Made by a program: the position numbers and the translations under genes. From positions 151,620 through 215,619 of the forward strand of contig NIVC01001615.1 in assembly GCA_002269645.1 (NCBI GenBank): a DNA stretch of 64,000 nt. Reading direction: 5' to 3'. The stretch comes from Macrostomum lignano (taxonomy: Eukaryota). Under the pieces are notes generated by a model. That model was not told the origin of the DNA. It made no database searches and saw only the letters and a program-made list of their open reading frames with translations. This document shows, in pieces, positions 2,791 through 23,600 of the stretch; position 1 is the first letter of the stretch; each line of letters opens with the position of its first letter.

Positions 2791-3458
2791 GTAGAAGGAC
2801 GGGAAACCTTGTTTCTTAGAATTTTTTAAGGCACTTTTTCCCGAAAAAATACACTACGGAGATAGGAAATTTTCATTTTTTCAGCACAAAAATTGCTATT
2901 ACTTTTGATAGGAGGCAGATCCAGTGTTCATCTTTTGTTATGTTGTGCCTTTTTTATTGCTCTATCGATATTCATAAAGCTTTTCGTTCAGAAAATTAGG
3001 ATTCTATGTTAATTTTTTATTCTATGTATATTTTCACGTGTCTTGTGCCTGAAATACATTAGAATGCTACGGCTTGGCTCTTTGGTTTTATGAGTCTATT
3101 TTGTCATTCTTAACTGACTGTGTAGCAAATATTCGTAACAGAGATGATAAAATAGATTCATAAAACCAAATATTGGAGCTGTGTCATGCATTTTTGTGAT
3201 TTTTAGGTACAGGAAATATACATAGAATAAAAAATTAACATAGAAATCTAATTTTCTGAATGAAAAGCTTTATAAATATCGATAGAGCAATAAAAAAGGC
3301 ACAACAAATCAAAAGATGAACACTGGATCTGCCTCCTATCAAAAGTAATAGCAATTTTTGTGCTGAAAAAATGAAAATTTCCTATCCCCGTAGTGTATTT
3401 TTTCGGGAAAAAGTGCCTTCAAAAATTTTCTAAGAAACAATGTTTCCCGTCCTTCTAC
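2791..3458. mobile_element. TTAA-flanked MITE with about 250-bp terminal inverted repeats
   Basis: TTAA-GTAGAAGGACGGGAAAC... at 2787 mirrors ...GTTTCCCGTCCTTCTAC-TTAA at 3462. The arms stay nearly complementary for about 250 bp. A related copy lies at 42857-43560. Confidence 0.85.
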
Positions 3459-4170
3459 TTAAGTCATCATTTGTCTAACTATGCACTAATACTTTTTTGT
3501 ACTTTTTTTAAATAACTTAAAAAATGATTAAGTCTATACATTTGTAAAGGCATTGTCTTAATTCTTATTTTTTACATTAAATCATTTTTGTTTTTCTTTA
3601 ACCACTGTCTAAATATTTATTTGATTTAATTGACCCTGTTATGTATATAAGCATGATAAAAAGCATCTGGCCATGAATTAAGCATATATAAAAGCAAAGT
3701 TCCATAGCTAGGGCCTAGCTTCAAACCAGTAAGTAACCTTTTGGCTTTTCAACTTCCTAATCCTATTCAAGCAAGTTGCTCTGGTACCTATTTTATCCAG
3801 AGTTGTATTTTAGCAATTTCTTTTGTTGACTACTAGGTAGGCCTAACCTATTATCATATTATAAAACACTGTTTGAAGACTTATCATTTTAGGCCTACAA
3901 AGTAATAATGAATGATTTGTTCTTTTTCATGCATGCTGCATTGACTGAAATACTGCTGTTACCAGCTTCTAATTGATAGATTTGCATAAAACACATCTGG
4001 ACTGACTATCATACTATTAAGTCAAAGGTTTCCTACACAAAACAAGGTTTTGCATATACCTTTTGCATCTTTTTAAAAACTTTGCAAGTTATCAATTTTC
4101 TATTGATTTACTTCATTTTGCAATGAATATAATAATTTTATAAAGATATATTCTATTTATTAATAGCACA

Positions 4171-4341
4171 ATGCTTGCGTACAACAGACCCACTGAAAAT
4201 AACTCAAAGTACGAACTGCATAGACACTGCTCCTGGAGACATATCGATTGCTATATTGCTGTCGCCTTTGCATCAAACTTTTTGGTTTTTAAATTGACAA
4301 ATCAAGTACCAGCAAGCAGTCCACCCTGTGGAACTTTGTAA
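4171..4341 (+). CDS. Conserved upstream small ORF (56 aa) ahead of BIR-like paralogue 1
   Basis: ATG 4171 to TAA 4339-4341: MLAYNRPTENNSKYELHRHCSWRHIDCYIAVAFASNFLVFKLTNQVPASSPPCGTL. The ELHRxCSxRHIDxY motif recurs at 8764-8805 with mostly synonymous codon differences. Confidence 0.6.
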   Translation: MLAYNRPTENNSKYELHRHCSWRHIDCYIAVAFASNFLVFKLTNQVPASSPPCGTL

Positions 4342-4387
4342 TTACCTGTATCTTGCTGCATAAAGAAAGAAGGCGTCAATTTCAACA

Positions 4388-5122
4388 ATGTCAGGCAGAC
4401 CAATTTCTGAATATTTGTCTGAGCGCAGTTACTCGGCTGTCTGTCAGGTCTTGCACATTTTTCTGACTGCCCGCCATCCTGGAATGCTGCTGCAGCAAGA
4501 TCGCGTGACTGAGTTTGCTAGGCATGGCCTGAATGGGCCCGAGCATATTCAGTGCGCTAAGCTGGGCTTCTTTCCGCTTCCTTCACCTCATGGTGGTGCA
4601 ATCGACGACAGCACCGTGATGGTTGTCTGCTTCAGCTGCGGCTTCGAGTGCAAGCTGTCCAGCGTCCAGCATCGAATCCTTGGCAGCTTCAACAGGCTGC
4701 ACTGCCCGCTGCAGGCTGCCCGTTGTCCCAAGCAGCAACCAATGCAACAGGAGCTTTTGGGTGACGGGCCTTCGGATTTCCCGAGCCCTACGCAGCTTGC
4801 ACAGCTTCTGACTTTCATTCAGAGCAATTGTGGCACAGTACTGACCGAGATGTTTCCGCCGGATGCAGTTCTGTTGTGTGCCGCCACCATGCTCGTGACT
4901 GAGCGCCGATCTCTGTTAAATCTGCAGCCCGGGTATCTGGTTGAGCGCCTGCAAGCTAGCAATTGGAACCGGCAATCGCTGTGGCAATTCCCCGTGCTTG
5001 ACGAGGCGTCAACTTTTACTGGCGACTTCATCAACCTGGTCAGCGCTGGTCCCGGAGCTGTCGACCTGAGAGATGTTCAGGGTATCGGCTATTTAGTTAG
5101 CCAGGCTGTGATGGCTGAATGA
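4388..5122 (+). CDS. Divergent BIR-like (IAP-like) protein, paralogue 1, intronless, 244 aa
   Basis: DRVTEF...AKLGFF...VVCFSCG...CP resembles the BIR pattern RLxTF...LAxAGF...VxCFxCG...CP. It aligns along its length with the spliced gene at 8915-15588. AATAAA at 5177. Confidence 0.7.
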   Translation: MSGRPISEYLSERSYSAVCQVLHIFLTARHPGMLLQQDRVTEFARHGLNGPEHIQCAKLGFFPLPSPHGGAIDDSTVMVVCFSCGFECKLSSVQHRILGSFNRLHCPLQAARCPKQQPMQQELLGDGPSDFPSPTQLAQLLTFIQSNCGTVLTEMFPPDAVLLCAATMLVTERRSLLNLQPGYLVERLQASNWNRQSLWQFPVLDEASTFTGDFINLVSAGPGAVDLRDVQGIGYLVSQAVMAE

Positions 5123-5362
5123 ATGCTTTTTGAACTAACTAACTAAATTATCAAAAAACCTGTTTTAATTAACTCGAATAAACTTTACCCAAAAGACTGC
5201 TATGATTATATATACTAGAAAAATTAGCTGGATGTCACTCGTAATTTAATTTGTGAAAAAGTAGAGCGTATACTTCTTTTTTAGTAGTTTGCCAGAGCAG
5301 CGTCACTTAAATCGATCGGGGTTTGCGACCTCGGGAGCTTATGTGATGAAGAATTAACGACT

Positions 5363-6370
5363 CAGGGGTCGGCAAACTTTTCAGTGCGGGCCGGATCGGA
5401 AGACTGGCTGAAGGGGGGCGGGCCAGAAAAAATGCACAACAAATTGAGACTCAATGACCATTTGGTATCCTATAGAATCGTTCGTTAAATTATTTTCTCG
5501 CTTGAGTTTGATTCCTTTCTATTTTTAGAGTCCAAATATATGAAAAAAAGTGAACGAATTAACAGGTTAACATGTACTGACAGCTAAATTGTTTGTTATA
5601 GTCAACCGCCACATCACGACACGAGGGTACTACGTAATAGTTAAACAGTGGCACAATCCAACCTGAGGCCGCTGGTCGTCCAGCCATCCAGGGAGTAGTA
5701 GTCCAAAATCAGAAAATTAAGCAATGGCTTGAATTGAATCCCAGTATTGGCAGCTCGGCAGCTAATTTTTCAATCTCAAACGCATCTTCCTTTAATTAAG
5801 GTCCCCCCGCGCACTGTCACAGTTTTTTACCATAGACATATTTTCATGCTTTGCGTGCACAAAACTGATACTTTAGAACTGATTTTTTAGAATTCCTGAA
5901 ATCAGCGCACAAACTCAAATGTGGAGAGATGTGTGGATAAAATTACCCAGTCACACTATTACCCAACATTAAAGTAGTACCCTCGTGTCGTGATGTGACA
6001 GGAAACGAAGGAAACGAATTCAAGCGAAAAAATAATTCAAGGAACGATTCTATAGGATAGCCGACAATTTTAGATGATAGACCAAATAGACCAATAGACC
6101 AATTGATAGACCAATTTTAGATCTAGACAGACAGCACATCAGTTCAAACTTTCGAATATGGTATGGGGGGTAAAGGCCCAGGGGGGTAGATTTTGGAGGG
6201 TAAAGACCCAGAGGGCGGATTCTGGAGGGTAAAGACCCTGGGGGCAGATTCTGGATGGTAAAGAAAGACCCAGGGGGGGGGGCGAAGTAATCGGGGGACG
6301 ACCTGTGGCCCGTGGTCTTGAACTGAAAACCTGATCGGGCCCTCAAGTGGAAAAAGGTTGCCGACCCCTG
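5363..6370. mobile_element. hAT-type MITE
   Basis: TIRs CAGGGGTCGGCAAACTTTT / AAAAAGGTTGCCGACCCCTG. No clean target-site duplication is retained. Confidence 0.7.
5610..5997. mobile_element. Small inverted-repeat element nested in the hAT MITE
   Basis: Perfect 24-bp inverted repeat CACATCACGACACGAGGGTACTAC (5610-5633) / GTAGTACCCTCGTGTCGTGATGTG (5974-5997). Confidence 0.6.
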
Positions 6371-6707
6371 GCCTAACTGTTATCAGTCTGGCGGGGGGCT
6401 GCGACACCATCCCTTTTATCACTTGCAATCTTTGTATAGCCTTATCTACTCAAGTCCTTTTTATTGCGTATTGATAATTTTTCCTACATTATTTTACTCG
6501 TATCTATTTATTCAAGCTTTGCCTCTGTTATTGGAATATTTGTTATTTAATGCTTGTGGATTGGGTTCTTAATTGTTTAATGCTCGTTTTGAATTATTTT
6601 TCACCCTATGTAGTGTATTCTTTTTCGATAACTATTTATTGTTTATTATATTCAAAAACCATCAAGTTCACGTACCGAACGTTACGAAATAATCCAAAAC
6701 TGTGGGA

Positions 6708-6950
6708 GGGGGCGAAGGAGCTTAGCGGTAAGCGGATCTGACTCTCGCGTCACGACACCTGGTTCGATTCCGTCCGCAGCTACATTAGTTTAGGGCTTGT
6801 GTGTTCACGAAAGTTGGCTGTTGGCGTTAGACTTACCTATGAAAAAAACCTATGTAAAAATTAACGTAATTGTGGGTAAACGGCAGGAGTAACTTTAACT
6901 GTATTCTAAAGGCTAAGGCCTCGTCATCTAGTTAGTACTACGTCTTTTTT
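6708..6950 (+). mobile_element. tRNA-headed SINE containing a 28S rRNA-derived segment
   Basis: A-box-like GGAGCTTAGCGG and B-box GGTTCGATTCC (6761-6771). Positions 6874-6936 match the conserved eukaryotic 28S stretch GGGTAAACGGCGGGAGTAACTATGACT...GCCTCGTCATCTAATTAGT. Confidence 0.6.
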
Positions 6951-7611
6951 TGGGTGGGCATTTTTACAACTTACCTTGGCTGGGCCCCTCACCTAAAAGT
7001 GAGATTCTGAGTCGCGATATGTCAGAACTGGTGTAGTGGTGTCTGAGTGGTGGCTTAGCAAGCACTTCACCTGTAGACACCTGCGTTTGAAGTTCTGTCC
7101 AAGTCTCAGTGAGCAACCTTATGCACACACTGTAACAGAATTACTTTAAATCCTTTCCTTGCTACTATTCAGTAGGCAATTTTCTATGTGGGTGATGATT
7201 CGAGAATTGAATTTGGCCATGCACCAAACCTTCCTTGATAATTGAATTTTATTTTCAAATAATAAAAGTTGGGACTGGAGACGCAGACTTGCAAGTTAGA
7301 AATTCGCCTAATCGAGTATGGTATCGTGACAATTGACAGCTGCGAACTCCGTTACCCTTAAATTTAGCTGAAACGTGTTTTGTTATTTTTCTTTAATCAA
7401 ATTTTCTGTTTTCTTTATTTTTTACGCGTCAATAAGCTATATTTATTTCACTTCTACTCACTTAATAAAAATATTTACCTTGTTTACGTATGGCGGGTAT
7501 AAAAAACTGCCTTAATATCTTTGCTTTTATCAATAGTAATTCATTAGTGTTTTTAATAGGCAATATTTGTAGCCTCATCCCAGATCCCCTATATGCCCAT
7601 GCAGTCATTCC

Positions 7612-8532
7612 CAGACCTCATAGAGCCATGAAGTTCCTGTCTAAGACTCCACAGAGCCATGAAGTTCCTGTCCTAGACTCCAGAGCCATGCAGTTGCAGT
7701 TCCTGTCTGAGACTCCACAGAGCCATGAAGTTCCTGTCTGAGACTCCACAGAGCCATGCAGTTCCTGTCCTAGACTCCAGAGCCATGCAGTTCCTGTCCT
7801 AGACTCCAGAGCCATGCAGTTCCTGTCCTAGACTCCACAGAGCCATGCAGTTCCTGTCCTAGACTCCAGAGCCATGAAGTTCCTGTCCTAGACTCCAGAG
7901 CCATGCAGTTCCTGTCCTAGACTCCAGAGCCATGCAGTTCCTTTCCTAGACTCCACAGAGCCATGCAGTTCCTGTCTGAGACTCCACAGAGCCACGAAGT
8001 TCCTGTCTGAGACTCCACAGAGCCATGAAGTTCCTGTCTGAGACTCCACAGAGCCACGAAGTTCCTGTCTGAGACTCCACAGAGCCATGAAGTTCCTGTC
8101 TGAGACTCCACAGAGCCACGAAGTTCCTGTCTGAGACTCCACAGAGCCATGAAGTTCCTGTCTGAGACTCCACAGAGCCACGAAGTTCCTGTCTGAGACT
8201 CCACAGAGCCATGAAGTTCCTGTCTGAGACTCCACAGAGCCACGAAGTTCCTGTCTGAGACTCCACAGAGCCACGAAGTTCCTGTCTGAGACTCCACAGA
8301 GCCACGAAGTTCCTGTCTGAGACTCCACAGAGCCACGAAGTTCCTGTCTGAGACTCCACAGAGCCACGAAGTTCCTGTCTGAGACTCCACAGAGCCACGA
8401 AGTTCCTGTCTGAGACTCCACAGAGCCACGAAGTTCCTGTCTGAGACTCCACAGAGCCACGAAGTTCCTGTCTGAGACTCCACAGAGCCACGAAGTTCCT
8501 GTCTGAGACTCCACAGAGCCACGAAGTTCCTG
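7612..8532. repeat. 31-bp minisatellite
   Basis: Unit AGAGCCACGAAGTTCCTGTCTGAGACTCCAC, about 30 copies; shorter variant units at the left end. Confidence 0.95.
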
Positions 8533-8697
8533 TTTTTAACTCCAGAACCATTCACATGCATTCGGAACATATTTTGAATTTTCGTCAAACGTGACTACTT
8601 CATTTATTTTCACGGTTTTTATTCATGCTTATGAATTTTATCATTATTCCACTCGAAGGTCGGAAGCATCTCTGAATCGGCCGTGTCTATTAAATTA

Positions 8698-8874
8698 ATG
8701 GGAGTTCTTACAAACAGTATCAGTGTAAAACCCGTGGTCTTTCATCGAATATCAGTGTTCATTGAGCTTCACAGATACTGCAGCTCTCGTCATATTGACA
8801 CGTACTTGCTGGACTGCACTCTGCTTAATCTGCTGTCACAGCTGTTTAAAGGCAGCGCTGTGTGTGGCGACTAA
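8698..8874 (+). CDS. Conserved upstream small ORF (58 aa) ahead of BIR-like paralogue 2
   Basis: ATG 8698: MGVLTNSISVKPVVFHRISVFIELHRYCSSRHIDTYLLDCTLLNLLSQLFKGSAVCGD*. It ends 40 nt before the main ATG and shares its motif with 4171-4341. Confidence 0.6.
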   Translation: MGVLTNSISVKPVVFHRISVFIELHRYCSSRHIDTYLLDCTLLNLLSQLFKGSAVCGD

Positions 8875-8914
8875 ACTTCATAGAGCCAGCTGACTTACAA
8901 AAATTACTGCCAAT

Positions 8915-11900
8915 ATGAATGTTGAACTGCCTGAAACTAAGAAAATTTCTCGCTATCTGTCAAGCTCTGTGAATTTGAACTCCATTACTTCAATTCTTCT
9001 GCTATGGCTCAATGCTGTTTACCAAACTTCGTTCCTGGAAAAGGACCGTTTGGCAAGCTTTCTGGTGTATTTTCCTGCTCTGAACCAGGAGTTTGAAAAC
9101 CTCGCCGCACTTGGCTTCTTTGCCATTTCTCAGCATGAAATTGTTTGCTTCGCCTGTGGCCTGCGCTGCCAGATAAGAAGGTGAGCAGGCTTGATAGGGC
9201 TGCATCTGAAAGGCCAGTCAAGGGGGTAGCCAGCCACTGACGGGACAGTGAGGCGGGGGGGGTTAACCAGCCACTGGCGGGACAGTGAGGCGGAGGGGGG
9301 GTACCCAGCCAGGGTCAGAGAAGGGGGTAGCCAGCCACTGAAGGGTCAGAGAAGGGGGTAGCCAGCCAGGGTCAGAGAAGGGGGTAGCCAGCTACTGAAG
9401 GGTCAGAGAAGGAGGTTAGCCAGTCACTGAGGGGTCGGAGAAGGGGGTAGCCAGCCACTGAGGGGTCAGAGAAGGGGGTAGCCAGCCACTGAGGGGTCAG
9501 AGAAGGGGGTAGCCAGCCACTGAGGGGTCAGAGAAGGGGGTAGCCAGCCACTGAGGGGTCAGAGAAGGGGGTAGCCAGCCACTGAGGGGTCAGAGGGGTG
9601 TAGCCAGCCACTGAGGGGTCAGAGAAGGGGGTAGCCAGCCACTGAGGGGTCAGAGAAGGGGGTAGCCAGCCACCGAGGGGTCAGTAAAAAGGGGTAGCCA
9701 GCTACTGACGGATTAGAGACAATATATAGTTTTATAGTGTTTGAATCTGGTCTATGAAAGTTTTTTAAAACAGATAGCCCAGTGCTGCTCTCCAACAGAC
9801 AAATCATGACCGTAACGTTCAATGTCTGCACAATTGCTATATAATTCAAAACGCTTTCATTTGCAGACAGCTGCAGCCCCGACCCGGCATCTTGAACAAT
9901 CCCACCTGTCCGCTTCAAGCTGCTCGGCTGTACTGCGGCGGTGGCAGCGGCGACCGTGAGCTGGGCTTGCCGATACCTGAGCTGCGCTGCCTGAGGCCCA
10001 CGATCTGGCTTCGATTTGTTGATCTTAAAGCTATCAGCGATGTGAGCAATAGGCCTTAACCTCTTCAAGACTGGGCCCAAAATTTTTCATCTCCGTTCCA
10101 GTCGGATGGTAAGCAGTGCTTACCATAGACTATTTGGCTTCTGACTGAGCCATAGATATTTTTTCTCTCCGTTCCGGTCGGCATGGTAAGCAATGCTTAT
10201 CAATAGACATTCAGTCGGCTGGGGTAGAAAAATAAGCAAAAATGTACATTTAAGTAGCCTGTTTCTAGACTGAAAGCACACTGGTCCCTGTACAAGAGGA
10301 ATGGGCAACACGAACAGTATAAGAAACGTTCTTTTCCTAGCCCCAGTCAGTTCAAACAGAGAAGCTGATCCATCTCCTTACTCGTCTAGCTTTTTGACAG
10401 CTTATTCAGTCGTGCTTTATACTACAGTGGTTCTTTGACTCCTTAAGTTTTCGTTTCCTATACTTTATCTGTCTCAGTATGGTTTGAGCCGAATACTATA
10501 AAATCAGTTCTCAAAGAGCTTTGAAATGGCCCAAGTGGACGAAATGTCTGAACTCATGACATCGGACGACGAGGACTACCTCTTATCAGATGATTCTTCT
10601 GGTGAGTCAGATGTTCTGGACAGTGTTGATGAGGACGTACAGGTTGCTGATGAGTTGTCGTGGCGGCCTGCTATCGTTGGGAACGACGCATCGACGAGAG
10701 ATATCGAGTTTTTCGGAACACCTGGCCTGAATCCTGGAATAATAGTGCCTGCCGATGTTGAGAACTCAACTTCCTTCTTCTTAGGTTTATTCCTGTCTGA
10801 TTCGTTGTTTGAAGATCTAGCTATGTGGACTAACCGTAGAGCTTGGGCAGCAATTCATTCATTGGATGCTGATGACCTGCCTGTGAGTTTGTTACAGTGG
10901 AACGAATGTAGCGCAAACGAAGTCAAGAAGTTGATTGGCATGTACCTGTACATGGGAAGCAACAAGAAGACTGAGATGAATGACTACTGGAGTACTGGCA
11001 GCTACCACTCGACACCATACTTTCAAGCACCTGAGGCGCTCTCTAGAGACCGCTTCAAGCAATTGCTCGGCTTTCTTCGCTTTTATGATTGCCTTGAGGA
11101 TCCCACACCTGGTGATCCGTTGTACAAGATTCGTCCATTTTTGAACAATTTGCGTGACACCTGCGTGAACATCTACAGACCTGACGAAGAAATAAGTGTT
11201 GACGAATCGTTGGTTCTTTACAAAGGACGATTAGGCTTCAAGCAATACATTCCAACTAAGCGCGCCAGGTATGGCATCAAGGTGTACTGTGCTTGTGAGT
11301 CTGAAACAGGCTACTTGTTCAACTTTCGAGTTCATGCTACTCCGGAGGAGAATCGTAGATTTGCTTTAGATCCACAAAGCGGAAACCTGTCATTCAGCGA
11401 AAAAATTGTTGTCGAGCTTTGCCAAGATCTGTTGGACCAAGGCTACCGCATTTTTGCCGACAAGTGGTTTGGTTCTTATCGGTTGGCTATGTACCTCCTG
11501 GATCGAGATACTCATCTGACTTGCACCATACGAGCTGACCGAGGCGTGCCGATTGAGCTCAGGCAGTTAAATGTGCCGCCCAATGATGTCGGCTTCATGC
11601 GCAAGGGTGCCGTACTGGCCGCAAAGATTGTTGAAAGAAAGGAAAGCGGTCTAAAAACGTTGTATTTGCTGGACACAAAGGAGGCAGCATCAAAAGTTCC
11701 AGTCCGACGAATCGCCCGAGGTGGAGCAGCGGCTGCAGTGCAGAAGTGCCGCTCAGCTTTGAGTTACAACCGCTGCATGGGCGGCGTCGATCGAATGGAC
11801 GGCCACATGCAGCCCTACCAGCCTGCTCGGAAAACCAGAAAATGGTTTTTGAAACTTGGTTTGCACCTGTGCTTGCAGATGGTCCGAAATGCTTGGATTG

Positions 11901-14900
11901 TATACTGTAAGTGCGGCGGCCGAAAGGTGTTCGTTAAGTTTCTGGAAGCCAGCATTCGTGAATTCGTGCAGAGCACTGGGATGAGCAGAAGGCGAGCAGC
12001 CGCTGCAGCTCAAGCCTTCGGCCAAGTCAGCCCGCATTTCCCAATGCGAATTGCGGCCCGAGAAAGTCAGCCAAGGCCAAATAAGCGGTGTCGCGTCTGC
12101 TACTGAGCTGAAAGAATCAAACGATCAATTTACTGCTGCCCTGCGTGTCCAGGTGAACCAGGACTGTCTGGAGACCTGCTTTCAGCAATGGCATTCTTGA
12201 ATTCTTGACAGTTTTTGTTCCCAGTGCACGCATGCTGGAAGAATATTTCCTGCTATATTCCCTTCTATACGTGTGCCTGAAAGAAAATTGAGGAAATGGG
12301 TTTCTCCCAGTTAGCTTCTTCTTTCTGAGACTATAATTAAAAATTAATTCAGAATACTAGTGGCGCTAACATCTCGAGTTGCTGAGAATGCGCCATAAGA
12401 ATTGTTTGAATGAATGCCAAAAACGAATCGTTTGTATACTTCGTGATAAAACATCTTTAAAGATCTAAGAAACAAGTGATAGTAATTAAATAACATTTAC
12501 TTTTTCTGTTATCAATTCTGTCCTGCTCCAAATACGGGTTTATGCGGGGCAAAGAGGGCAACTGCCCCCCAAACAACTTACATCTGTGGCGCCCCCAGCT
12601 GCGCAGCTCGCCTTTGTTGTGTCTTTTCCCTTTGCTGCCGCCTCCTAGGTACAAAAATTCTGCACTACTTAATAATTTCCTGGGTCAAAAAATCTGCATC
12701 CGCCTCTGTTCTGCTGACATTTTTCATGTCCCAGTTTTCATGTTTGCATCATACGCTGGTACGAGTAGATTGTTTCTCTTCAGAAAATTTTAATTAACTT
12801 ACGCGTACGGTGTTACTCAATTTATTCTTACTCAATTGTTTTCTCACTCAGCAAAAATATACATCAAATTTATATAAACGAAAACTGATCTTACTGTATA
12901 CAGTTGTATTTCAAGGAAGCTGAAATTTTTGTACCGTCTGTTGGTTATTTTGATTGAGAAAGAGATCTAAACTACGAGTAAAAAAATCAGGGAAGCTATC
13001 GTTCTAAAAGTTCTGCTTACCATAGCCGACCGGAACGGAGTGTGAATTTTACCATAGATTATATTTGATCTGAATCATCTGACTTCTGCCTAGACTGAAA
13101 CTAGGGTGTGCGCATGGTAAGCAGTGCTTACCATCAGACTTTTGGAGGTTAAATGTCCTAATTAATTTTACTATTTCTACTTGTAACTACAGTCACATCC
13201 TGTTAATCCAGATCTCTCCCAGTCACATCCTGTTAATCCAGATCTCTCCCAGTCACATTCTGCTAATTCAGATCTCTCCCAGTCACATTCTGTTAATCCA
13301 GATCTCTCCCAGTCACATTCTGCTAATCCAGATCTCTCCCAGTCACATCCTGCTAATCCAGATCTCTCCCAGTCACATCCTGCTAATCCAGATCTCTCCC
13401 AGTCACATCCTGTTAATCCAGATCTCTCCCAGTCACATCCTGCTAATCCAGATCTCTCCCAGTCACATCCTGTTAATCCAGATCTCTCCCAGTCACATCC
13501 TGCTAATCCAGATCTCTCCCAGTCACATCCTGTTAATCCAGATCTCTCCCAGTCACGTCCTGCTAATTCAGATCTCTCCCAGTCACATTCTGTTAATCCA
13601 GATCTCTCCCAGTCACATTCTGCTAATCCAGATCTCTCCCAGTCACATCCTGCTAATCCAGATCTCTCCCAGTCACATCCTGCTAATCCAGATCTCTCCC
13701 AGTCACATCCTGTTAATCCAGATCTCTCCCAGTCACATCCTGCTAATCCAGATCTCTCCCAGTCACATCCTGTTAATCCAGATCTCTCCCAGTCACATCC
13801 TGCTAATCCAGATCTCTCCCAGTCACATCCTGTTAATCCAGATCTCTCCCAGTCACATCCTGCTAATTCAGATCTCTCCCAGTCACATCCTGCTAATCCA
13901 GATCTCTCCCAGTCACATCCTGTTAATCCAGATCTCTCCCAGTCACATTCTGCTAATTCAGATCTCTCCCAGTCACATTCTGTTAATCCAGATCTCTCCC
14001 AGTCACATTCTGCTAATCCAGATCTCTCCCAGTCACATCCTGCTAATCCAGATCTCTCCCAGTCACATCCTGTTAATCCAGATCTCTCCCAGTCACATCC
14101 TGCTAATTCAGATCTCTCCCAGTCACATCCTGTTAATCCAGATCTCTCCCAGTCACATCCTGCTAATCCAGATCTCTCCCAGTCACATCCTGCTAATCCA
14201 GATCTCTCCCAGTCACATCCTGTTAATCCAGATCTCTCCCAGTCACATTCTGCTAATCCAGATCTCTCCCAGTCACATTCTGTTAATCCAGATCTCTCCC
14301 AGTCACATCCTGCTAATCCAGATCTCTCCCAGTCACATCCTGTTAATCCAGATCTCTCCCAGTCACATCCTGCTAATCCAGATCTCTCCCAGTCACATCC
14401 TGTTAATCCAGATCTCTCCCAGTCACATCCTGTTAATCCAGATCTCTCCCAGTCACATCCTGCTAATTCAGATCTCTCCCAGTCACATCCTGCTAATCCA
14501 GATCTCTCCCAGTCACATTCTGTTAATCCAGATCTCTCCCAGTCACATTCTGCTAATTCAGATCTCTCCCAGTCACATTCTGTTAATCCAGATCTCTCCC
14601 AGTCACATTCTGCTAATCCAGATCTCTCCCAGTCACATCCTGCTAATCCAGATCTCTCCCAGTCACATCCTGTTAATCCAGATCTCTCCCAGTCACATCC
14701 TGCTAATTCAGATCTCTCCCAGTCACATCCTGCTAATTCAGATCTCTCCCAGTCACATCCTGCTAATCCAGATCTCTCCCAGTCACATCCTGTTAATCCA
14801 GATCTCTCCCAGTCACATCCTGCTAATTCAGATCTCTCCCAGTCACATCCTGTTAATCCAGATCTCTCCCAGTCACATCCTGCTAATCCAGATCTCTCCC

Positions 14901-15588
14901 AGTCACATCCTGTTAATCCAGATCTCTCCCAGTCACATCCTGCTAATCCAGATCTCTCCCAGTCACATCCTGCTAATCCAGATCTCTCCCAGTCACATCC
15001 TGTTAATCCAGATCTCTCCCAGTCACATCCTGCTAATCCAGATCTCTCCCAGTCACATTCTGCTAATCCAGATCTCTCCCAGTCACATCCTGCTAATCCA
15101 GATCTCTCCCAGTCACATCCTGCTAATCCAGATCTCTCCCCAGTCACATCCTGCTAATCCAGATCTCTCCCAGTCACATCCTGCTAATCTCTGTCAGCTT
15201 TTCTTCATCAACGCAGGCCTTGCGCGCAGCTCCCAGCCGCACCGCCAGCTCGTTTTACTCCAAAGACGCGGTGCTGTTCCTGCTGACGGAGCTGACGGTG
15301 CAGGACGGCGCGGACGTGCGCAATGTGCCGGTGTCTGCCTTGGTGAGGCGCCTCTTCTCGGCCCGTGACGGCTCCTACCCGTTCTCAAACGACGCCGCTA
15401 ACGAGGGCAAATTTGCCGGCGCTTTCCAGCAGCTGGTGGCGGCCGCTGGCAATGGCGAAGGATTCTCGCCTCCCGGCCAGGAGCCGGTTGACGAGATCGG
15501 CAATCTGCTGCCGCCGCCGCCGCCGCAGCAGCAGCATGAGAACTTCGGCCCGTTGGTGACCTCGTCGCCCGTGTATTCGCTGATCTGA
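8915..15588 (+). CDS. Divergent BIR-like (IAP-like) protein, paralogue 2, 3 exons, about 270 aa
   Basis: Model: 8915-9180, 9867-10041, 15217-15588, with phase-compatible GTGAGC donors and CAG acceptors. Exon 1 has EKDRLASF...LAALGFF...IVCFACG; exon 2 has CPLQAAR identical to paralogue 1; exon 3 has DAVL...LVRRL...FAGAFQQLVAA matching DAVL...LVERL...FTGDFINLVSA. The exon 2/3 junction is less certain. Confidence 0.72.
9218..9705. repeat. About 31-bp minisatellite in intron 1 of paralogue 2
   Basis: Unit GGGGTAGCCAGCCACTGAGGGGTCAGAGAAG with variants. Confidence 0.9.
10060..13148 (+). mobile_element. piggyBac transposon, near full length (3.09 kb)
   Basis: TTAA at 10056-10059 and 13149-13152. 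Imperfect termini CCTCTTCAAGACT / AGACTTTTGGAGG. Subterminal motifs ATGGTAAGCAGTGCTTACCAT and CTCCGTTCCGGTCGG occur at both ends. An internal transposase ORF is present. Confidence 0.9.
10526..12106 (+). CDS. piggyBac transposase (PGBD4-like), C-terminal cysteine-rich domain truncated
   Basis: DDD triad contexts SVDESLV, FADKWF, MGGVDRMD; also YIPTKRARYGIK. The ORF stops at RCRVCY*, and the remaining CRD codons follow out of frame to 12200. Confidence 0.92.
   Translation: MAQVDEMSELMTSDDEDYLLSDDSSGESDVLDSVDEDVQVADELSWRPAIVGNDASTRDIEFFGTPGLNPGIIVPADVENSTSFFLGLFLSDSLFEDLAMWTNRRAWAAIHSLDADDLPVSLLQWNECSANEVKKLIGMYLYMGSNKKTEMNDYWSTGSYHSTPYFQAPEALSRDRFKQLLGFLRFYDCLEDPTPGDPLYKIRPFLNNLRDTCVNIYRPDEEISVDESLVLYKGRLGFKQYIPTKRARYGIKVYCACESETGYLFNFRVHATPEENRRFALDPQSGNLSFSEKIVVELCQDLLDQGYRIFADKWFGSYRLAMYLLDRDTHLTCTIRADRGVPIELRQLNVPPNDVGFMRKGAVLAAKIVERKESGLKTLYLLDTKEAASKVPVRRIARGGAAAAVQKCRSALSYNRCMGGVDRMDGHMQPYQPARKTRKWFLKLGLHLCLQMVRNAWIVYCKCGGRKVFVKFLEASIREFVQSTGMSRRRAAAAAQAFGQVSPHFPMRIAARESQPRPNKRCRVCY
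13190..15190. repeat. 30-bp minisatellite (about 66 copies) ending at the 3' splice site of paralogue 2 intron 2
   Basis: Unit CAGTCACATCCTGCTAATCCAGATCTCTCC with C/T variants. Confidence 0.97.
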
Positions 15589-16096
15589 ATAGACGAACAA
15601 GCTGACAGAGAAACTGAATTTTATAACAACTTTGAAAGAAGACTTTAATAGTTTGTGAATGCTTCTATATATATTTGCGTGCTAGTATGCCCAAACTGCT
15701 AATGAATTCGTCCAGGGAAAGCATCATTGATCATGCAGTTTGAGTCTTCTGTATGTTGTCAGAAAACATACGAATTCTGTACTCTGAGTAGTTTCATAAG
15801 GCGTAGCGCCTCCTGCTCCGAATCTCTCAACTTGTCTGTCAACTTGCTGTTCGAGCGAGTCCGTTAACGCCCGCCCAGGTCTCAGAATTGTACCACTGGA
15901 CGGTTTGTCAACAGCGCCGCCCTCTGGCGGTCAAGTAGGGCCTCGGACTGTAGCAATCCAAGCAAGCCCGTTGTGACAGCAAAGATCTTGTCACCAGACA
16001 CCAAAGGGAACCAGACCGCTGTTGGTAGACAAACTGCTGACATCGCTTAAGTTGCAGTCTAACACGGTTGTCTAGACCGCAGATACCAGATATTAA

Positions 16097-20616: not shown

Positions 20617-23600
20617 TCAGTCTATCAGCGCCTCGGCCAGCACCCAGACCTCCTCCTTGGGCTTAGTCAGCAGGCCGAAGCTGGACACAGCCGTGTAGGT
20701 CTCGTCAACCAGCCGGAAGCGGAAGGCGGCCAGCAGGCGCGACAGCCACAGGGCCGTCTCGGCGTAGGCCAGCCGGTAGCCCGGGCACTTGCGGCGGCCA
20801 AAGCCGAAGGGTTCAAACAGCTGCTGGCCGGTCCACCTGTCCGGGTTGAAGTCGTCCGGCTCAGGGTAGGCCTCTGAGCACATGCCGGCCGCGCCGAGCG
20901 CTTGGATCACCGGGGTGCCGGCTGGCAGCTGCGAAGGGGGCAGGCGAGAGTGCTCGGAGATGAGGGATCAGGGTTACTCTGTCATTCCTGCTAGATTGCT
21001 GCTTTAGGAACTTTAGGTTAGATAGACTCACATTTCAGGTCTATGAATCGAGAAAATTATTTCTTTTCGGGTTTACTACGAGCTTTTTCCAACTATTTCT
21101 ATTCTCAACTTTGCCAGAGATTTTTCCTCCTGGGATTTCCCTGCAAAATAGATTCCCTCCTGCTGGGATTTCCCTGCAAAATAGATTCCCTCCTGGGATT
21201 TCCCTGCAAAATAGATTCCTTCCTGGGATTTCCCTGCAAAATAGATTCTCTCCTGGGATTTCCCTGCAAAATAGATTCTCTCCTGGGATTTCCCTGCAAA
21301 ATAGATTCTCTCCTGGGATTTTCCTGCATAATAGATTCTCTTTCCCGGGATTTCCCTGCAAAATAGATTCTCCCTCCTGGGATTTCCCTGCGAAATAGAT
21401 TCTCCCCCTGGGATTTCCCTGCGAAATAGATTCTCCCTCCTGGGATTTGCCAGCAAAATAGATTCTCCCGGCTGGGATTTCCCTGCCAAATAGATTTTCC
21501 CTCCTTGGATTTCCCTGCAAAATAGATTCTCCCGCCTGGGATTTGCCAGCGAAAAAGATTCCCTCCTGGGTTTTCCCTGCAAAATAGATTCTCTCCTGGG
21601 ATTCCTCTGCGAAAGAGATTCTCCCTCTTGGGAATTCCCAGCTAAAAATACTTCTGGAATTTCCCTGCCTAATAGATTCTCCCTCCTGGGATTCCCCTGC
21701 AAGAGATTCTCCCTCTTGGGAATTCACAGCTAAAAATACTCCTTCTGGGATTTCCCTGAATAGATTTTCCCTCCTTGGATTTCCCTGCAAAATAGATTCT
21801 CCCGCCTGGGATTTGCCAGCGAAAAAGATTCTCCCCCTGGGTTTTCCCTGCAAAATAGATTCTCTCCTGGGATTCCTCTGCGAAAGAGATTCTCCCTCTT
21901 GGGAATTCCCAGCTAAAATACTTCTGGAATTTCCCTGCCTAATAGATTCTCCCTTCTGGGATATCCCTGCGAAATAGATTCTCCCTTCTGGGATTTCCCA
22001 GCGAAATAGATTCTTCCTCCTGGGATTTCCCTGCAAAATAGATTTTCCCTTCTTGGATTTCCCTGCAAAATAGATTCTCTCCTGGGATTCCTCTGCAAAA
22101 GAGATTCTCCCTCCTGGGATTCCCCTGCAAGAGATTCTTCCTCTTGGGAATTCCCAGCTAAAAATACTCCTTCTGGGATTTCCCTGCAAAAAATTCTCTT
22201 TTCTGGGAATCTGGGATTTCCCTGCGAAATGGATTTTTCCTGACGGGATTTCCCTGCAAAAGAGATTCTCGCTCTTGGGGTTTCCCTGTAAAAAATACTC
22301 GTGGGGTTTTCCTGCTTACGGTGTGGCCGCCGACCTCGACCTCGGTGTCGGACACCCGGGCAGCGAACGGGGCCAGACAGGACAGCCGCATAGTTTCGTC
22401 AAGGAAGGCCCGATGGAAGGTCATCTGCCCGATGGCTGCCATGTTGGCCTCTCCGGCGGCGCCGAGGACCTCAGCGGACTCGGCCCGGAGCCGGTCGGCC
22501 AGGTTCGGGTGTTGGATAGCATAGTAGAGGGCCCAGAGCAGCAGGTAGCCGGAGGTGTGGAACCCGCCAACCATGTAGGTGATCACATCGGATCGGAGAG
22601 CCTCCGCGTCCTTGGCGTGCAGCTCGATGGCCAGATCGGCGAAGGTCTTGTCAACGTCCGAGTCGAACTTCATGGCCGAGCGTCGGCGTACGGTTGAGTC
22701 CACGAATTCGTGCAGGTGCGAAAGGGCGTCGTTGAATGCCTGGATAGCATCGGGTAGGGCGTTGTGAGTTCAATTACAATGGCTAAATGTAACACCTGCT
22801 TTTAGTCTTAAGCTCAGGATTTGGATCTCTCTATCTGGGTTCTTCATAGCTGGATTCGGGATCTTCATGTTTGGAATTGGGATCTTCATGTTTGGATTCG
22901 AGATCTTCATATTTGGAATCGGGATCTTCATGTTTGGAATTGGGATCTTCATGTTTGGAATTGGGATCTTCATATTTGGAATTGGGATCTTCATGTTTGG
23001 AATTGGGATCTTCATGTTTGGAATTGGGATCTTCATGTTTGGATTCGAGATCTTCATATTTGGAATTGGGATCTTCATATTTGGAATCGGGATCTTCATG
23101 TTTGGAATTGGGATCTTCATATTTGGAATCGGGATCTTCATATTTGGAATCGGGATCTTCATGTTTGGAATTGGGATCTTCATATTTGGAATCGGGATCT
23201 TCATGTTTGGAATTGGGATCTTCATATTTGGAATCGGGATCTTCATATTTGGAATCGGGATCTTCATGTTTGGAATTGGGATCTTCATATTTGGAATCGA
23301 ATCCTATTTGAGTTGGGTATTCGGGATCAGAATCCCAACAGTCGCGCACCTGGACGCGATGATCGCCAGCCTCGGGCTCTCCCTGAGTCAGACGCGCCTC
23401 CATCTCGTTCCAAGCGAGATCGTAGCAGGATTTTAATTGAGCCACCTGAGTATGGGATTTGGGATGAAGAATAAGCAATTAGGAAATTAGAAAGCGTTTT
23501 ATTACAGAAACATATTTGCTGTACAAGCAGCAAAAACAGCCACCTGCTCATCGGGCAGGCTGGCGCTGTCGGGCTCGACTGTCACTCGAAGAATCGCTTT

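What the first reader, a model, noticed from the sequence alone, without database searches (positions are those of the whole stretch)
4171..8874. Conserved small upstream ORF (ELHRxCSxRHIDxY) paired with both BIR-like paralogues
Seen: each paralogue is preceded by an ATG-initiated ORF of 56 aa (4171-4341) or 58 aa (8698-8874), ending 46 nt and 40 nt before the main ATG. Over 14 aligned codons (4213-4254 vs 8764-8805), 11 residues are identical (E L H R C S R H I D Y). Eight of those 11 use different synonymous codons (gaa/gag, ctg/ctt, cat/cac, tcc/agc, aga/cgt, atc/att, gat/gac, tat/tac). A hydrophobic stretch follows the motif in both. Inference: this is purifying selection on a peptide, so the locus may be a two-ORF unit of a His/Cys micropeptide plus an IAP-like protein (conserved peptide uORF or bicistron). 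The first ORF is below the supplied track cutoff and would be missed by routine annotation.
Basis: partly seen in the sequence, partly recalled or inferred. Interest (0 to 1): 0.82.

Follow-up and report, generated by a model that had tools for sequence, protein, structure and literature searches.

The report
Conserved peptide upstream ORF, flatworm gene pair
Two old tandem copies of a flatworm-only cysteine-rich gene each carry a short upstream reading frame whose 14-residue His/Cys motif has been kept by selection on the peptide, a new example of a known kind of element (conserved-peptide upstream ORF).

Summary
The window is Macrostomum lignano scaffold NIVC01001615.1.

- **The match:** uORF1 (4171-4341, 56 aa) and uORF2 (8698-8874, 58 aa) share ELHRxCSxRHIDxY. 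That is 11/14 residues and 26/42 nt, and 8 of the 11 conserved codons differ synonymously. Shuffled upstream regions never exceed 8/14.
- **Independent support:** a second locus (L001) carries both units with both uORFs intact. There uORF1 has 20 nt changes placed 6/2/12 over codon positions (omega 0.16, P=0.006). uORF2 differs only by a Ser-to-Ser AGC>TCC switch.
- **Separate from the main ORF:** the main ORFs are 33% identical and lie in the +1 frame. A stop in that frame lies in the spacer, and all four annotated CDS start at the main ATG. The 214-nt leaders hold no other ATG.
- **Reading:** most likely a translated conserved-peptide uORF, either a small bicistronic peptide or a nascent-chain regulator.
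- **Not excluded:** weak in-frame GT-AG paths would make it an N-terminal exon, and no transcript data were available.
- **"BIR-like":** only weakly supported, because the matches are below threshold and the canonical His ligand is Gly.
- **Relatives:** neither ORF has a homologue in the large protein libraries.

This is a new member of a known kind and of moderate interest.

The parts
4113..4148 (+). Conserved AT-rich block upstream of uORF1 (TGCAATGAATATA...TAAAGATA). It is a possible core promoter or TATA-like element and contains a 6-codon mini-ORF (ATG at 4123).
   Evidence: It is the only well-conserved stretch in a 5' flank that is otherwise 69% identical, with gaps, to the second locus L001. 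The ATG at 4123 is listed. The promoter role is inferred, not tested.
4171..4341 (+). uORF1: 56 codons plus TAA. Start context agcacaATGC (A at -3).
   Evidence: The L001 copy (9784-9954) is intact and the same length. It has 20 nt differences placed 6/2/12 over codon positions and 8 aa changes. NG86 omega is 0.157, against 0.78 and 2.5 in the other two frames. Simulation gives P=0.0056.
4213..4254 (+). Motif 1: ELHRHCSWRHIDCY.
   Evidence: 11/14 residues identical to motif 2. All 3 nt differences from L001 are synonymous. The AF2 model places it as strand-turn-strand, with pLDDT about 75-79.
4342..4387 (+). Spacer 1: 46 nt. It holds a stop in the main frame (TAA 4361-4363) and no AATAAA.
   Evidence: It is 43/46 identical to L001.
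4388..5122 (+). Main ORF 1: 244 aa, a single-exon CDS in the NCBI annotation. It is cysteine-rich with a weak BIR resemblance.
   Evidence: Annotated CDS with exactly these bounds. It is 92% identical to BOX15_Mlig015637g1. There is no Pfam hit. Omega against L001 is 0.67.
5177..5182 (+). AATAAA poly(A) signal downstream of main ORF 1.
   Evidence: Read directly from the sequence. It shows that a canonical signal is used after the main ORF but not after the uORF.
8698..8874 (+). uORF2: 58 codons plus TAA. Start context aaattaATGG (U at -3, G at +4).
   Evidence: The L001 copy (14512-14688) encodes an identical peptide. The only nt change is AGC>TCC at 8854-8855, which is Ser to Ser.
8764..8805 (+). 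Motif 2: ELHRYCSSRHIDTY.
   Evidence: It is identical in L001.
8875..8914 (+). Spacer 2: 40 nt. It holds a stop in the main frame (8891-8893) and no AATAAA.
   Evidence: It is identical in L001.
8915..9180 (+). Main ORF 2, exon 1. It contains the RLASF...LGFF...CFACG segment. The donor is AAG|GTGAGC.
   Evidence: The annotated CDS starts at 8915. It is 33% identical to main ORF 1 over 112 aa, E=3e-12. Pfam BIR gives E=0.0085, below the cut-off. The weak PDB hits are all BIR domains.
9867..10040 (+). Main ORF 2, exon 2. It contains CPLQAAR, the block best conserved with main ORF 1. The acceptor is TTTGCAG| and the donor is |GTGAGC.
   Evidence: In CPLQAAR, 5 of 7 codons differ synonymously, the same behaviour as the uORF motif.

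Best explanation
Each paralogue is a two-cistron unit. A translated conserved-peptide upstream ORF (about 6.4 kDa, core motif E-L-H-R-x-C-S-x-R-H-I-D-x-Y) lies in the same 5' leader as a lineage-restricted Cys-rich main ORF. It is in a different frame and is closed by its own stop.

**How it would work**
- Ribosomes scanning from the cap meet the uORF AUG first.
- The main AUG, 217 nt downstream, is reached only by leaky scanning or reinitiation.
- The uORF therefore necessarily limits output of the main ORF. This step is inferred from position.

**What selection preserves**
Selection acts on the peptide sequence itself; this is shown here. Within this anatomy I favour two options.
- A released small peptide, made in a fixed ratio with the main protein, that acts with or near it (about 0.35).
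- A purely cis-acting nascent-chain arrest peptide (about 0.25).
The two are not exclusive. The confidence of 0.6 is for the anatomy, that is, a separately translated conserved-peptide uORF on the main ORF's mRNA.

**Shown:** peptide-level purifying selection, a separate frame and stop, and AUG-free leaders.
**Inferred:** co-transcription, translation from the uAUG, and the mode of action.
For: **Selection on the peptide, between paralogues**
- 11/14 residues are kept at only 62% nt identity, and 8 of the 11 conserved codons are changed synonymously.
- Shuffles reach at most 8/14, and 0 of 200,000 random-substitution trials reproduce the match.
- The bona fide coding block CPLQAAR of the main ORFs behaves the same way, with 5 of 7 codons changed synonymously.

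**Selection on the peptide, against the second locus L001**
- uORF1 differences fall 6/2/12 over codon positions.
- Omega is 0.157 in the uORF frame, against 0.78 and 2.5 in the other two frames (P=0.0056).
- The constraint also holds before the motif (0.14) and after it (0.29).
- The only change in uORF2 is a Ser-to-Ser double substitution outside the motif.
- Both stops and both lengths are kept.

**A separate cistron**
- The main frame is +1 and has a stop in each spacer.
- All four annotated CDS begin at the main ATG. That annotation comes from TransDecoder run on assembled transcripts (PMC5730564).

**A scanned leader**
- There are 0 ATGs in the 214 nt between the uATG and the main ATG in both paralogues. 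About 3.3-3.5 are expected, P about 0.03 each.
- Conservation against L001 rises sharply just upstream of the uATG, from 69% to 88-95%.

**Favouring a released peptide**
- The motif lies 22-28 residues from the stop rather than at the C-terminus.
- The whole peptide is under constraint.
- The peptide tails are weakly similar between paralogues (P=0.015).
- AF2 gives a beta-meander with pLDDT 75-79 over residues 11-40.
Against: - No transcript, TSS (RAMPAGE), spliced-leader or ribosome-profiling data could be consulted. It is therefore not shown that the uAUG lies in the mature mRNA.
- A TATA-like TATAAAG lies only about 30 nt upstream of uATG1, and TATTAAAT lies 10 nt upstream of uATG2. If these are real TATA boxes, transcription would start at or after the uAUGs.
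- A uORF of 56-58 codons followed by a 40-46 nt spacer is unfavourable for reinitiation.
- In-frame GT-AG paths exist.
- The evidence comes from one species only: two paralogues, each in two loci. No cross-species copy could be found.
- The AF2 model rests on a two-sequence alignment.
Confidence: 0.6

Rival explanations
1. Same anatomy (a translated uORF in the leader), but the peptide has no life of its own. The motif acts only inside the ribosome exit tunnel as an arrest sequence, possibly ligand-dependent. It stalls the ribosome on the uORF and blocks scanning to the main AUG, as a classical regulatory CPuORF does. This is nested within the best explanation's anatomy, and its 0.25 is part of that 0.6.
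For: - Between paralogues only a 14-residue core is strongly kept, while the flanks have diverged. This is typical of tunnel-interacting motifs.
- Most characterised sequence-dependent uORFs work this way (PMC7530721).
- AUG-free leaders show that access to the main AUG matters.
Against: - Known regulatory CPuORFs usually have their critical residues in the C-terminal region (PMC7530721). Here the motif ends 22-28 codons before the stop.
- Constraint against the second locus extends over the whole peptide, including a Ser-to-Ser codon switch 5 residues from the C-terminus of uORF2.
Confidence: 0.25
2. The 'uORF' is really the first coding exon. A short intron removes the uORF stop, the spacer and the annotated ATG, and joins the motif in frame to the main ORF just before the conserved (P/K)IS.YLS block. 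This would give a protein about 50 residues longer.
For: Enumeration finds in-frame GT-AG paths in every copy.
- **Copy 1:** 4338-4398, 61 nt, TT|GTAATT...GGCAG|A. The same path exists in L001.
- **Copy 2:** 8860-8941, 82 nt, GCT|GTGTGT...CTAAG|A.
- Both paths land within 4 nt of the first residues conserved between the main ORFs.
- The N-terminal 5-10 residues after the annotated ATGs are not conserved between paralogues.
Against: - All four annotated CDS start at the main ATG, although TransDecoder would have taken a longer fused ORF had the assembled transcript been spliced that way.
- The two candidate introns differ in phase (2 against 0) and in acceptor position by 1 nt. This is not expected for an intron inherited from before the duplication.
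- Neither donor matches the GT[G/A]AG motif enriched at M. lignano cis-donor sites, which DREME found in 122,399 of the 187,627 regions around cis-splice sites. The copy-2 acceptor is AAG, not CAG (PMC8629364).
- The genuine introns of gene 2 use GTGAGC and TTTGCAG.
- Copy 1 alone yields 19 such paths, so finding one is expected by chance.
- An in-frame ATG just upstream of the conserved block, and AUG-free leaders, in both paralogues would be a coincidence.
- The fused proteins gain no domain match.
Confidence: 0.15
3. The small ORF and the main ORF are not on the same mature mRNA. Either the small ORF is an independent tiny gene, or an upstream operon cistron with the main ORF SL trans-spliced. 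Alternatively, the main mRNA starts inside or after the uORF, while the peptide is made from a separate, longer transcript.
For: - In M. lignano 30% of genes are SL trans-spliced and 15% lie in operons (PMC8629364).
- TATA-like sequences lie very close to the uAUGs.
- uORF1 and main ORF1 have very different divergence from L001, dS 0.43 against 0.066.
Against: - The spacers are only 40-46 nt and lack AATAAA, whereas AATAAA follows main ORF 1 at 5177.
- Repeat-adjusted distances between adjacent trans-spliced genes peak near 100 bp.
- No [T/C]TNCAG trans-splice acceptor lies in either spacer.
- The tight, conserved linkage (217 nt from uATG to main ATG in all four copies) and the AUG-free leader argue for one scanned leader.
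Confidence: 0.12
4. The similarity is not due to a peptide. It would be a conserved DNA or RNA element (promoter site, RNA structure), or a patch of gene conversion between the paralogues.
For: The location is in an upstream region, where regulatory elements are expected.
Against: - Nine of the 16 nt differences fall at third codon positions. All 10 differences in the 11 conserved codons are synonymous, including the Ser and Arg family switches.
- 0 of 200,000 random placements of 16 substitutions keep the peptide.
- A conversion tract would give near-identical DNA, not 62% identity.
- The RNA folds no better than shuffles, with z of +0.5 and +0.6.
- There is no Rfam match.
- There is no ORF of 40 aa or more on the opposite strand.
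Confidence: 0.01

Closest known systems
Conserved-peptide uORFs (CPuORFs) of animals and plants, as defined by ESUCA (PMC7530721). Examples are the regulatory CPuORFs of PTP4A1, SLC6A8 and TMEM184C; the fungal arginine attenuator peptide and the AZIN1 upstream conserved coding region belong here too (own knowledge and PMC7530721).
   Same: - An ATG-to-stop ORF upstream of, and not fused to, the main ORF.
- A peptide sequence kept under Ka/Ks well below 1 across homologous genes.
- By its position it must reduce access to the main AUG.
   Different: - Conservation is shown only between two paralogues (in two loci) of one species, not across orders.
- The conserved core is mid-peptide, 22-28 codons from the stop, rather than C-terminal.
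- At 56-58 codons it is long.
- The host gene is an orphan with no homologue outside M. lignano.
- No functional assay exists.
Bicistronic uORF-encoded microproteins, such as the MIEF1, SLC35A4 and MKKS upstream ORFs. These are listed as CPuORFs in PMC7530721. That their peptides are stable proteins is from my own knowledge.
   Same: - A 50-70 residue peptide encoded in the leader of a protein-coding mRNA.
- Constraint over the whole peptide.
- Predicted ability to fold (AF2 pLDDT about 75 in the core).
   Different: - The peptide has not been detected.
- No homology to any of these.
- A partnership with the main-ORF product is pure inference.
Drosophila tarsal-less/polished rice polycistronic smORFs (own knowledge).
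   Same: A short conserved motif repeated in several small ORFs of an invertebrate locus, overlooked by standard annotation.
   Different: - In tal/pri several 11-32 aa ORFs lie on one RNA that has no long ORF.
- Here there is one small ORF per gene, each ahead of a long ORF, and the motifs are unrelated.
BIR (baculoviral IAP repeat) domain, Pfam PF00653. This concerns the main ORFs only.
   Same: - R-x-x-[ST]-F ... L-x-x-x-G-F-F ... V-x-C-F-x-C-G ... x-C-P-L, in the BIR order and with nearly the BIR spacing.
- All 12 weak PDB hits of gene 2 are BIR domains.
   Different: - The score is below the Pfam cut-off for gene 2, and gene 1 has no hit.
- The His zinc ligand position is Gly in both paralogues, and an extra conserved Cys (C-x2-C-x3-C) is present.
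- There are 21 rather than 23 residues between the CxxC and the last Cys. The BIR figure is from memory of the C-x2-C-x16-H-x6-C signature.

Membership tests
Conserved-peptide uORF (ESUCA criteria, PMC7530721) | An ATG-to-in-frame-stop ORF lying entirely in the 5'-UTR of a transcript of the main ORF. | not testable with these tools
   - No transcript, RAMPAGE or SL data were reachable.
- Indirect support only: the annotated CDS start at the main ATGs.
- The leaders are AUG-free.
- Conservation against L001 starts just upstream of the uATG.
Conserved-peptide uORF (ESUCA criteria, PMC7530721) | The uORF is not fused to the main ORF in the major transcript forms (uORF-mORF fusion ratio below 0.3). 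| tested here: inconclusive
   - 0 of 4 annotated CDS are fused.
- The frames differ by +1 and a stop in the main frame lies in each spacer.
- However, weak in-frame GT-AG paths exist, and no isoform data were seen.
Conserved-peptide uORF (ESUCA criteria, PMC7530721) | The uORF amino-acid sequence is conserved upstream of homologous main ORFs. | tested here: met
   - 11/14 residues between paralogues whose main ORFs are 33% identical.
- The peptides are 86% and 100% identical in the second locus.
- Cross-species conservation (at least two orders in ESUCA) could not be tested, because no homologues exist in the libraries.
Conserved-peptide uORF (ESUCA criteria, PMC7530721) | Ka/Ks clearly below 1 in the uORF frame. 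| tested here: met
   - Omega is 0.157 for uORF1 against L001. The other two frames give 0.78 and 2.5, and the simulation gives P=0.0056.
- Between paralogues, synonymous sites in the motif are saturated with only 3 replacement codons of 14.
Conserved-peptide uORF (regulatory subclass) | Peptide-sequence-dependent repression of main-ORF translation (ribosome arrest). | not testable with these tools
   This needs reporter assays with frameshifted or synonymous uORF variants, or toeprinting or ribosome profiling.
BIR / IAP repeat (Pfam PF00653) | Match to the family profile at or above the curated gathering score. | tested here: not met
   - Gene 2 scores 17.0 bits against a cut-off of 22.9 (E=0.0085), covering only profile positions 1-45 of 70.
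- Gene 1 has no hit.
- The PDB profile search gives nothing.
- Single-sequence PDB hits are all BIR domains, but with E of 0.085 or more.
BIR / IAP repeat (Pfam PF00653) | Zinc-binding signature C-x2-C-x16-H-x6-C. | tested here: not met
   - The CxxC and the last Cys (x-C-P-L) are conserved.
- The residue 7 before the last Cys is an invariant Gly, not His.
- No His is invariant anywhere in the alignment.
- The signature itself is from established knowledge.
BIR / IAP repeat (Pfam PF00653) | BIR fold (three-stranded sheet flanked by helices). | tested here: inconclusive
   - The AF2 model of main ORF 1 has mean pLDDT 45.9.
- The order of secondary-structure elements (helices, then E61-63, E76-81, E87-91) is compatible with the fold, but the model is too poor for a fold search.
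SL trans-spliced operon of M. lignano (PMC8629364) | The upstream cistron has its own poly(A) signal, and the downstream cistron has a [T/C]TNCAG trans-splice acceptor in the intercistronic region. | tested here: not met
   - The 46-nt and 40-nt spacers hold neither AATAAA nor a YTNCAG.
- This is a sequence-level test only; no SL-read data were seen.
Antizyme-type +1 programmed frameshift | The downstream frame is open across the upstream ORF's stop codon, so that a +1 shift yields a fusion. | tested here: not met
   The main frame is +1 relative to the uORF, but it is closed by a stop between the uORF stop and the main ATG in all four copies. It is open only from 24 nt or 21 nt upstream of the ATG.

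The most novel reading that the evidence does not exclude
The uORF peptide is released and is an obligate partner of the protein encoded downstream on the same mRNA. Its invariant H-x2-C-x3-H core, on a beta-hairpin, would supply metal ligands to the degenerate BIR-like module of the main ORF. That module has lost the canonical His (now Gly) in both paralogues. This would be a zinc module split across two cistrons of one messenger, with stoichiometry set by leaky scanning.
Probability: 0.05. Interest if true: 0.8.

Novelty: new member of a known kind. Interest (0 to 1): 0.45.

Why it matters
If confirmed, this would be, as far as my searches show, the first conserved-peptide uORF described in a flatworm. 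No paper in the searched library pairs Macrostomum with uORFs.

- **Annotation:** the peptide is not annotated and is absent from libraries of 5.8 and 1.8 billion proteins.
- **An unusual balance of constraint:** between the two loci, selection is more visible on the upstream peptide (omega 0.16) than on the main ORF (omega 0.67).
- **Testability:** M. lignano is transgenic-tractable (PMC5730564). The cis-versus-trans question could therefore be tested directly with reporters.
- **A wider lesson:** transcript-based annotation that keeps only the longest ORF hides small coding units that are under selection.
- **Limits:** conserved-peptide uORFs are already known in their thousands in animals, and the host gene is an orphan of unknown role. 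The general significance is therefore moderate.

Tried and rejected
1. **+1 programmed frameshift (antizyme-like).** Rejected: a stop in the main frame lies in each spacer.
2. **SL trans-splicing supplying its terminal ATG in frame with the motif.** An AG at 4208-4209 would work for copy 1. No equivalent in-frame acceptor exists in copy 2. Judged to be chance.
3. **RNA structure or a known RNA family.** The folds are no better than shuffles, and there is no Rfam hit.
4. **More copies of the unit.** There are none in the window or L001 beyond the two per locus. A weak tblastn hit of uORF1 at 60856-60954 (E=0.022) was treated as chance and not followed up.
5. **Homologues of the main protein.** Both word-indexed searches and the exhaustive HMMER search returned only the 92% identical second-locus copy. 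The exhaustive search also returned one junk repeat translation, P0002.
6. **Homologues of the uORF peptide.** None found. The exact peptides are not on record as called genes.
7. **PDB profile search.** Nothing found.
8. **AF2 of main ORF 1.** Too poor (pLDDT 46) to justify a fold search.
9. **Fused uORF+main proteins against Pfam.** No additional domain.
10. **Literature and supplement look-up of Mlig015637 for expression class.** Nothing found.
11. **Resemblance of the motif to the C-terminal His...Cys segment of BIR domains.** This was recalled from memory (for example survivin EEHKKHSSGC). I dropped it because the main ORFs already contain the aligned last-Cys segment (x-C-P-L) and no profile hit supports it.
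12. **Shared promoter motif between the two upstream regions.** Only AT-rich 8-mers are shared, which is not significant.

Full report
**1. Source and setting**

The window is Macrostomum lignano scaffold NIVC01001615.1 of assembly GCA_002269645.1. The record coordinate equals the window coordinate plus 151,619. The 244-aa ORF at 4388-5122 is annotated there as a single-exon CDS with exactly these bounds. The next annotated CDS starts at window 8915. A second, syntenic copy of the region lies on NIVC01000201.1 and was fetched as L001. It carries both genes in the same order. It is 88% identical at the DNA level around gene 1 and 93-96% identical around gene 2. M. lignano DV1 carries large duplicated chromosome segments (PMC8629364), so I treat L001 as a homeologous or duplicated copy.

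**2. The observation**

- uORF1 is at 4171-4341 (56 aa) and uORF2 at 8698-8874 (58 aa).
- The spacers to the main ATGs are 46 nt and 40 nt.
- The motif is ELHRHCSWRHIDCY (4213-4254) against ELHRYCSSRHIDTY (8764-8805).
- 11/14 residues and 26/42 nt are identical.
- Eight of the 11 conserved residues use different codons, including tcc/agc (Ser) and aga/cgt (Arg).

Chance is excluded by two tests.
- The best 14-residue window between the two 300-nt upstream regions, over all nine frame pairs, is 11. The maximum in 1500 dinucleotide shuffles is 8.
- With 16 random substitutions in the 42 nt, none of 200,000 trials keeps 11 or more residues.

BLASTP of the two peptides gives E=2e-7. The rest of the two loci is not alignable as DNA. 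The main ORFs are only 33% identical over 112 residues. The motif is therefore at least as well kept as anything in the main proteins. Their best block, CPLQAAR, shows the same signature, with 5 of 7 codons changed synonymously.

**3. An independent test of peptide-level selection**

In L001 both uORFs are intact, with the same lengths and the same stop codons.

For uORF1:
- The 20 nt differences fall 6/2/12 over codon positions and cause 8 residue changes, none in the motif. The three motif differences are all synonymous.
- The Nei-Gojobori omega is 0.157 in the uORF frame, against 0.78 and 2.5 in the other two frames.
- Relocating the same substitution types at random gives 13.1 ± 1.8 residue changes, so P(8 or fewer)=0.0056.
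- Constraint is seen before the motif (0.14), in it (0) and after it (0.29).

For uORF2, the only difference from L001 is AGC>TCC at 8854-8855. This is a two-base Ser-to-Ser switch outside the motif.

By contrast, main ORF 1 differs at 35 sites spread 12/10/13, with omega 0.67. Identity to L001 rises from 69% with gaps in the 5' flank to 88% in the uORF. It is 93.5% in the spacer and 95% in the main ORF.

**4. Is it a separate ORF or an exon?**

Evidence for a separate ORF:
- The main frame is +1 relative to the uORF in all four copies.
- It is closed by a stop inside each spacer. This excludes simple read-through and an antizyme-type +1 frameshift.
- All four annotated CDS begin at the main ATG. 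The annotation comes from genome-guided transcript assembly followed by TransDecoder (PMC5730564). That pipeline would have reported a longer fused ORF if the assembled transcript had been spliced in frame.

Evidence for an exon: enumerating GT/GC...AG pairs does find in-frame paths.
- Copy 1 has 19 such paths. The best is 4338-4398 (TT|GTAATT...GGCAG|A, phase 2).
- Copy 2 has two. The better is 8860-8941 (GCT|GTGTGT...CTAAG|A, phase 0).
- Both land just before the conserved (P/K)IS.YLS.

Why I rate the exon model low, at about 0.15:
- The two candidate introns differ in phase, and in acceptor position by 1 nt.
- Neither donor matches the GT[G/A]AG motif enriched at M. lignano cis-donor sites. 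DREME found that motif in 122,399 of the 187,627 regions around cis-splice sites (PMC8629364).
- The genuine introns of gene 2 use GTGAGC and TTTGCAG.
- Without transcript data the model cannot be excluded.

**5. The leader**

- Between the uATG and the main ATG there is no other ATG in either paralogue: 0 in 214 nt against 3.3-3.5 expected, P about 0.03 each. This fits a leader that ribosomes must scan.
- The start contexts are A at -3 for uAUG1, and U at -3 with G at +4 for uAUG2. Both main AUGs have A at -3.
- Neither spacer has AATAAA or a [T/C]TNCAG trans-splice acceptor. AATAAA does follow main ORF 1 at 5177. An operon-type arrangement is therefore unlikely.
- The uATG-to-main-ATG distance is 217 nt in all four copies, although compensating indels of +24, -18 and -6 nt separate the paralogues. 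I cannot say whether this is chance.
- TATA-like sequences lie very close to both uAUGs. If they are real TATA boxes, the uAUGs might not be in the mRNA. This is the main open risk.

**6. Other readings tested**

- The RNA around the motif folds no better than shuffles, with z of +0.5 and +0.6.
- There is no Rfam family and no tRNA in 3000-16000.
- No opposite-strand ORF of 40 aa or more covers either uORF.
- A gene-conversion patch would give near-identity, not 62% identity with synonymous differences.

**7. The proteins**

Main proteins:
- They have no detectable relatives. The word-indexed searches and the exhaustive HMMER search of 1.84 billion representatives return only the second-locus copy (BOX15_Mlig015637g1, 92%). 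The exhaustive search also returned one spurious repeat translation.
- Pfam BIR matches gene 2 below the cut-off (17 bits against 22.9) and does not match gene 1.
- All 12 weak PDB hits of gene 2 are BIR domains aligned over RLASF...LGFF...CFAC.
- The canonical His ligand position is an invariant Gly, and no His is invariant anywhere.
- The AF2 model is poor, with pLDDT 46.
- "BIR-like" is therefore a plausible remote resemblance, not an established membership.

uORF peptides:
- They have no relatives at all.
- AF2 on the two-sequence alignment gives a beta-meander (E13-21, E24-33, E36-42). pLDDT is 75-79 over residues 11-40, and the motif forms a strand-turn-strand. This is weak evidence.
- The tails after the motif are marginally similar (P=0.015), ending in C-G.

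**8. Interpretation**

The best-supported reading is a translated conserved-peptide uORF sharing the leader with the main ORF, at about 0.6. By position it must throttle the main ORF. What selection preserves is the peptide.

I favour a released small peptide (about 0.35) over a purely cis-acting arrest peptide (about 0.25), for four reasons.
- The conserved core is mid-peptide rather than C-terminal. PMC7530721 reports that the C-terminal region is the part shown to matter for stalling in many known regulatory CPuORFs.
- Constraint covers the whole peptide.
- The peptide has diverged between paralogues about as much as the main protein.
- The peptide is predicted to fold.

None of these four points is decisive.

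**9. Comparison with known systems, and verdict**

This meets the sequence-level criteria of a CPuORF: conservation upstream of homologous main ORFs, and Ka/Ks well below 1. The criteria that need transcripts, other species or functional assays could not be tested. It is a new member of a known kind in a phylum where none seems to have been described. It sits on an orphan gene pair. Interest is moderate (0.45).

Noticed in passing
window 10060-13148: A piggyBac-like element with an intact 526-aa transposase ORF (10526-12106; PF13843, E=2e-66). It has subterminal inverted repeats at 10100-10126 and 13114-13140. It sits in intron 2 of gene 2 and is absent from the second locus, where L001 15586 joins directly to window 13149. 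It may therefore be a recent insertion that is still mobile.
   Followed up: partly
L001 14729-16653; window 9867-10040: The 274-aa NCBI product of the L001 gene-2 copy is reproduced exactly by joining exon 1 to a last exon that starts inside the 30-bp tandem array. That model skips the conserved CPLQAAR exon, which has canonical splice sites in both loci. The annotated model is probably an alternative or mis-assembled isoform.
   Followed up: partly
window 4171-5122 against L001 9784-10735: Divergence is very uneven. uORF1 has dS 0.43. Main ORF 1, only 50 nt downstream, has dS 0.066 and omega 0.67, with differences spread 12/10/13 over codon positions. The flanks are 13-31% diverged. This suggests recent gene conversion over the spacer and main ORF 1, or a main ORF that is drifting nearly neutrally.
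   Followed up: partly
window 4171/4388 and 8698/8915; L001 9784/10001 and 14512/14729: The distance from the uORF ATG to the main ATG is exactly 217 nt in all four copies. This holds despite indels of +24, -18 and -6 nt between the paralogues in the pre-motif, post-motif and spacer parts.
   Followed up: no
window 5363-6370: A roughly 1-kb element with nested inverted repeats lies between the two genes. The outer arms are 19 nt and 95% complementary; the inner arms are 52 nt and 33 nt. It looks like a non-autonomous TIR transposon.
   Followed up: no
window 7622-8533 and 9312-9719: A 31-bp tandem array of about 30 copies ends 165 nt upstream of uORF2, so any promoter for gene 2 is confined to that gap or lies in the array. 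A different 31-bp array of about 13 copies fills intron 1 of gene 2. The window holds more than 20 such arrays in all.
   Followed up: no
window 22158-22703(-), 34016-34882(+), 39994-40470(-), 43824-44654(-), 47702-48163(-), 57269-57733(-): Other coding fragments: cytochrome P450 (E=8e-17), a retroelement gag with a CCHC knuckle, a fibrinogen C-terminal domain (E=5e-23), a retroviral-type integrase, reverse transcriptase, and an SH3 domain.
   Followed up: partly
L001 9959: The second-locus copy of spacer 1 has gained an ATG (ACATGTAT). It opens a 5-codon mini-ORF in the main frame. It is the only extra ATG in any of the four leaders.
   Followed up: no
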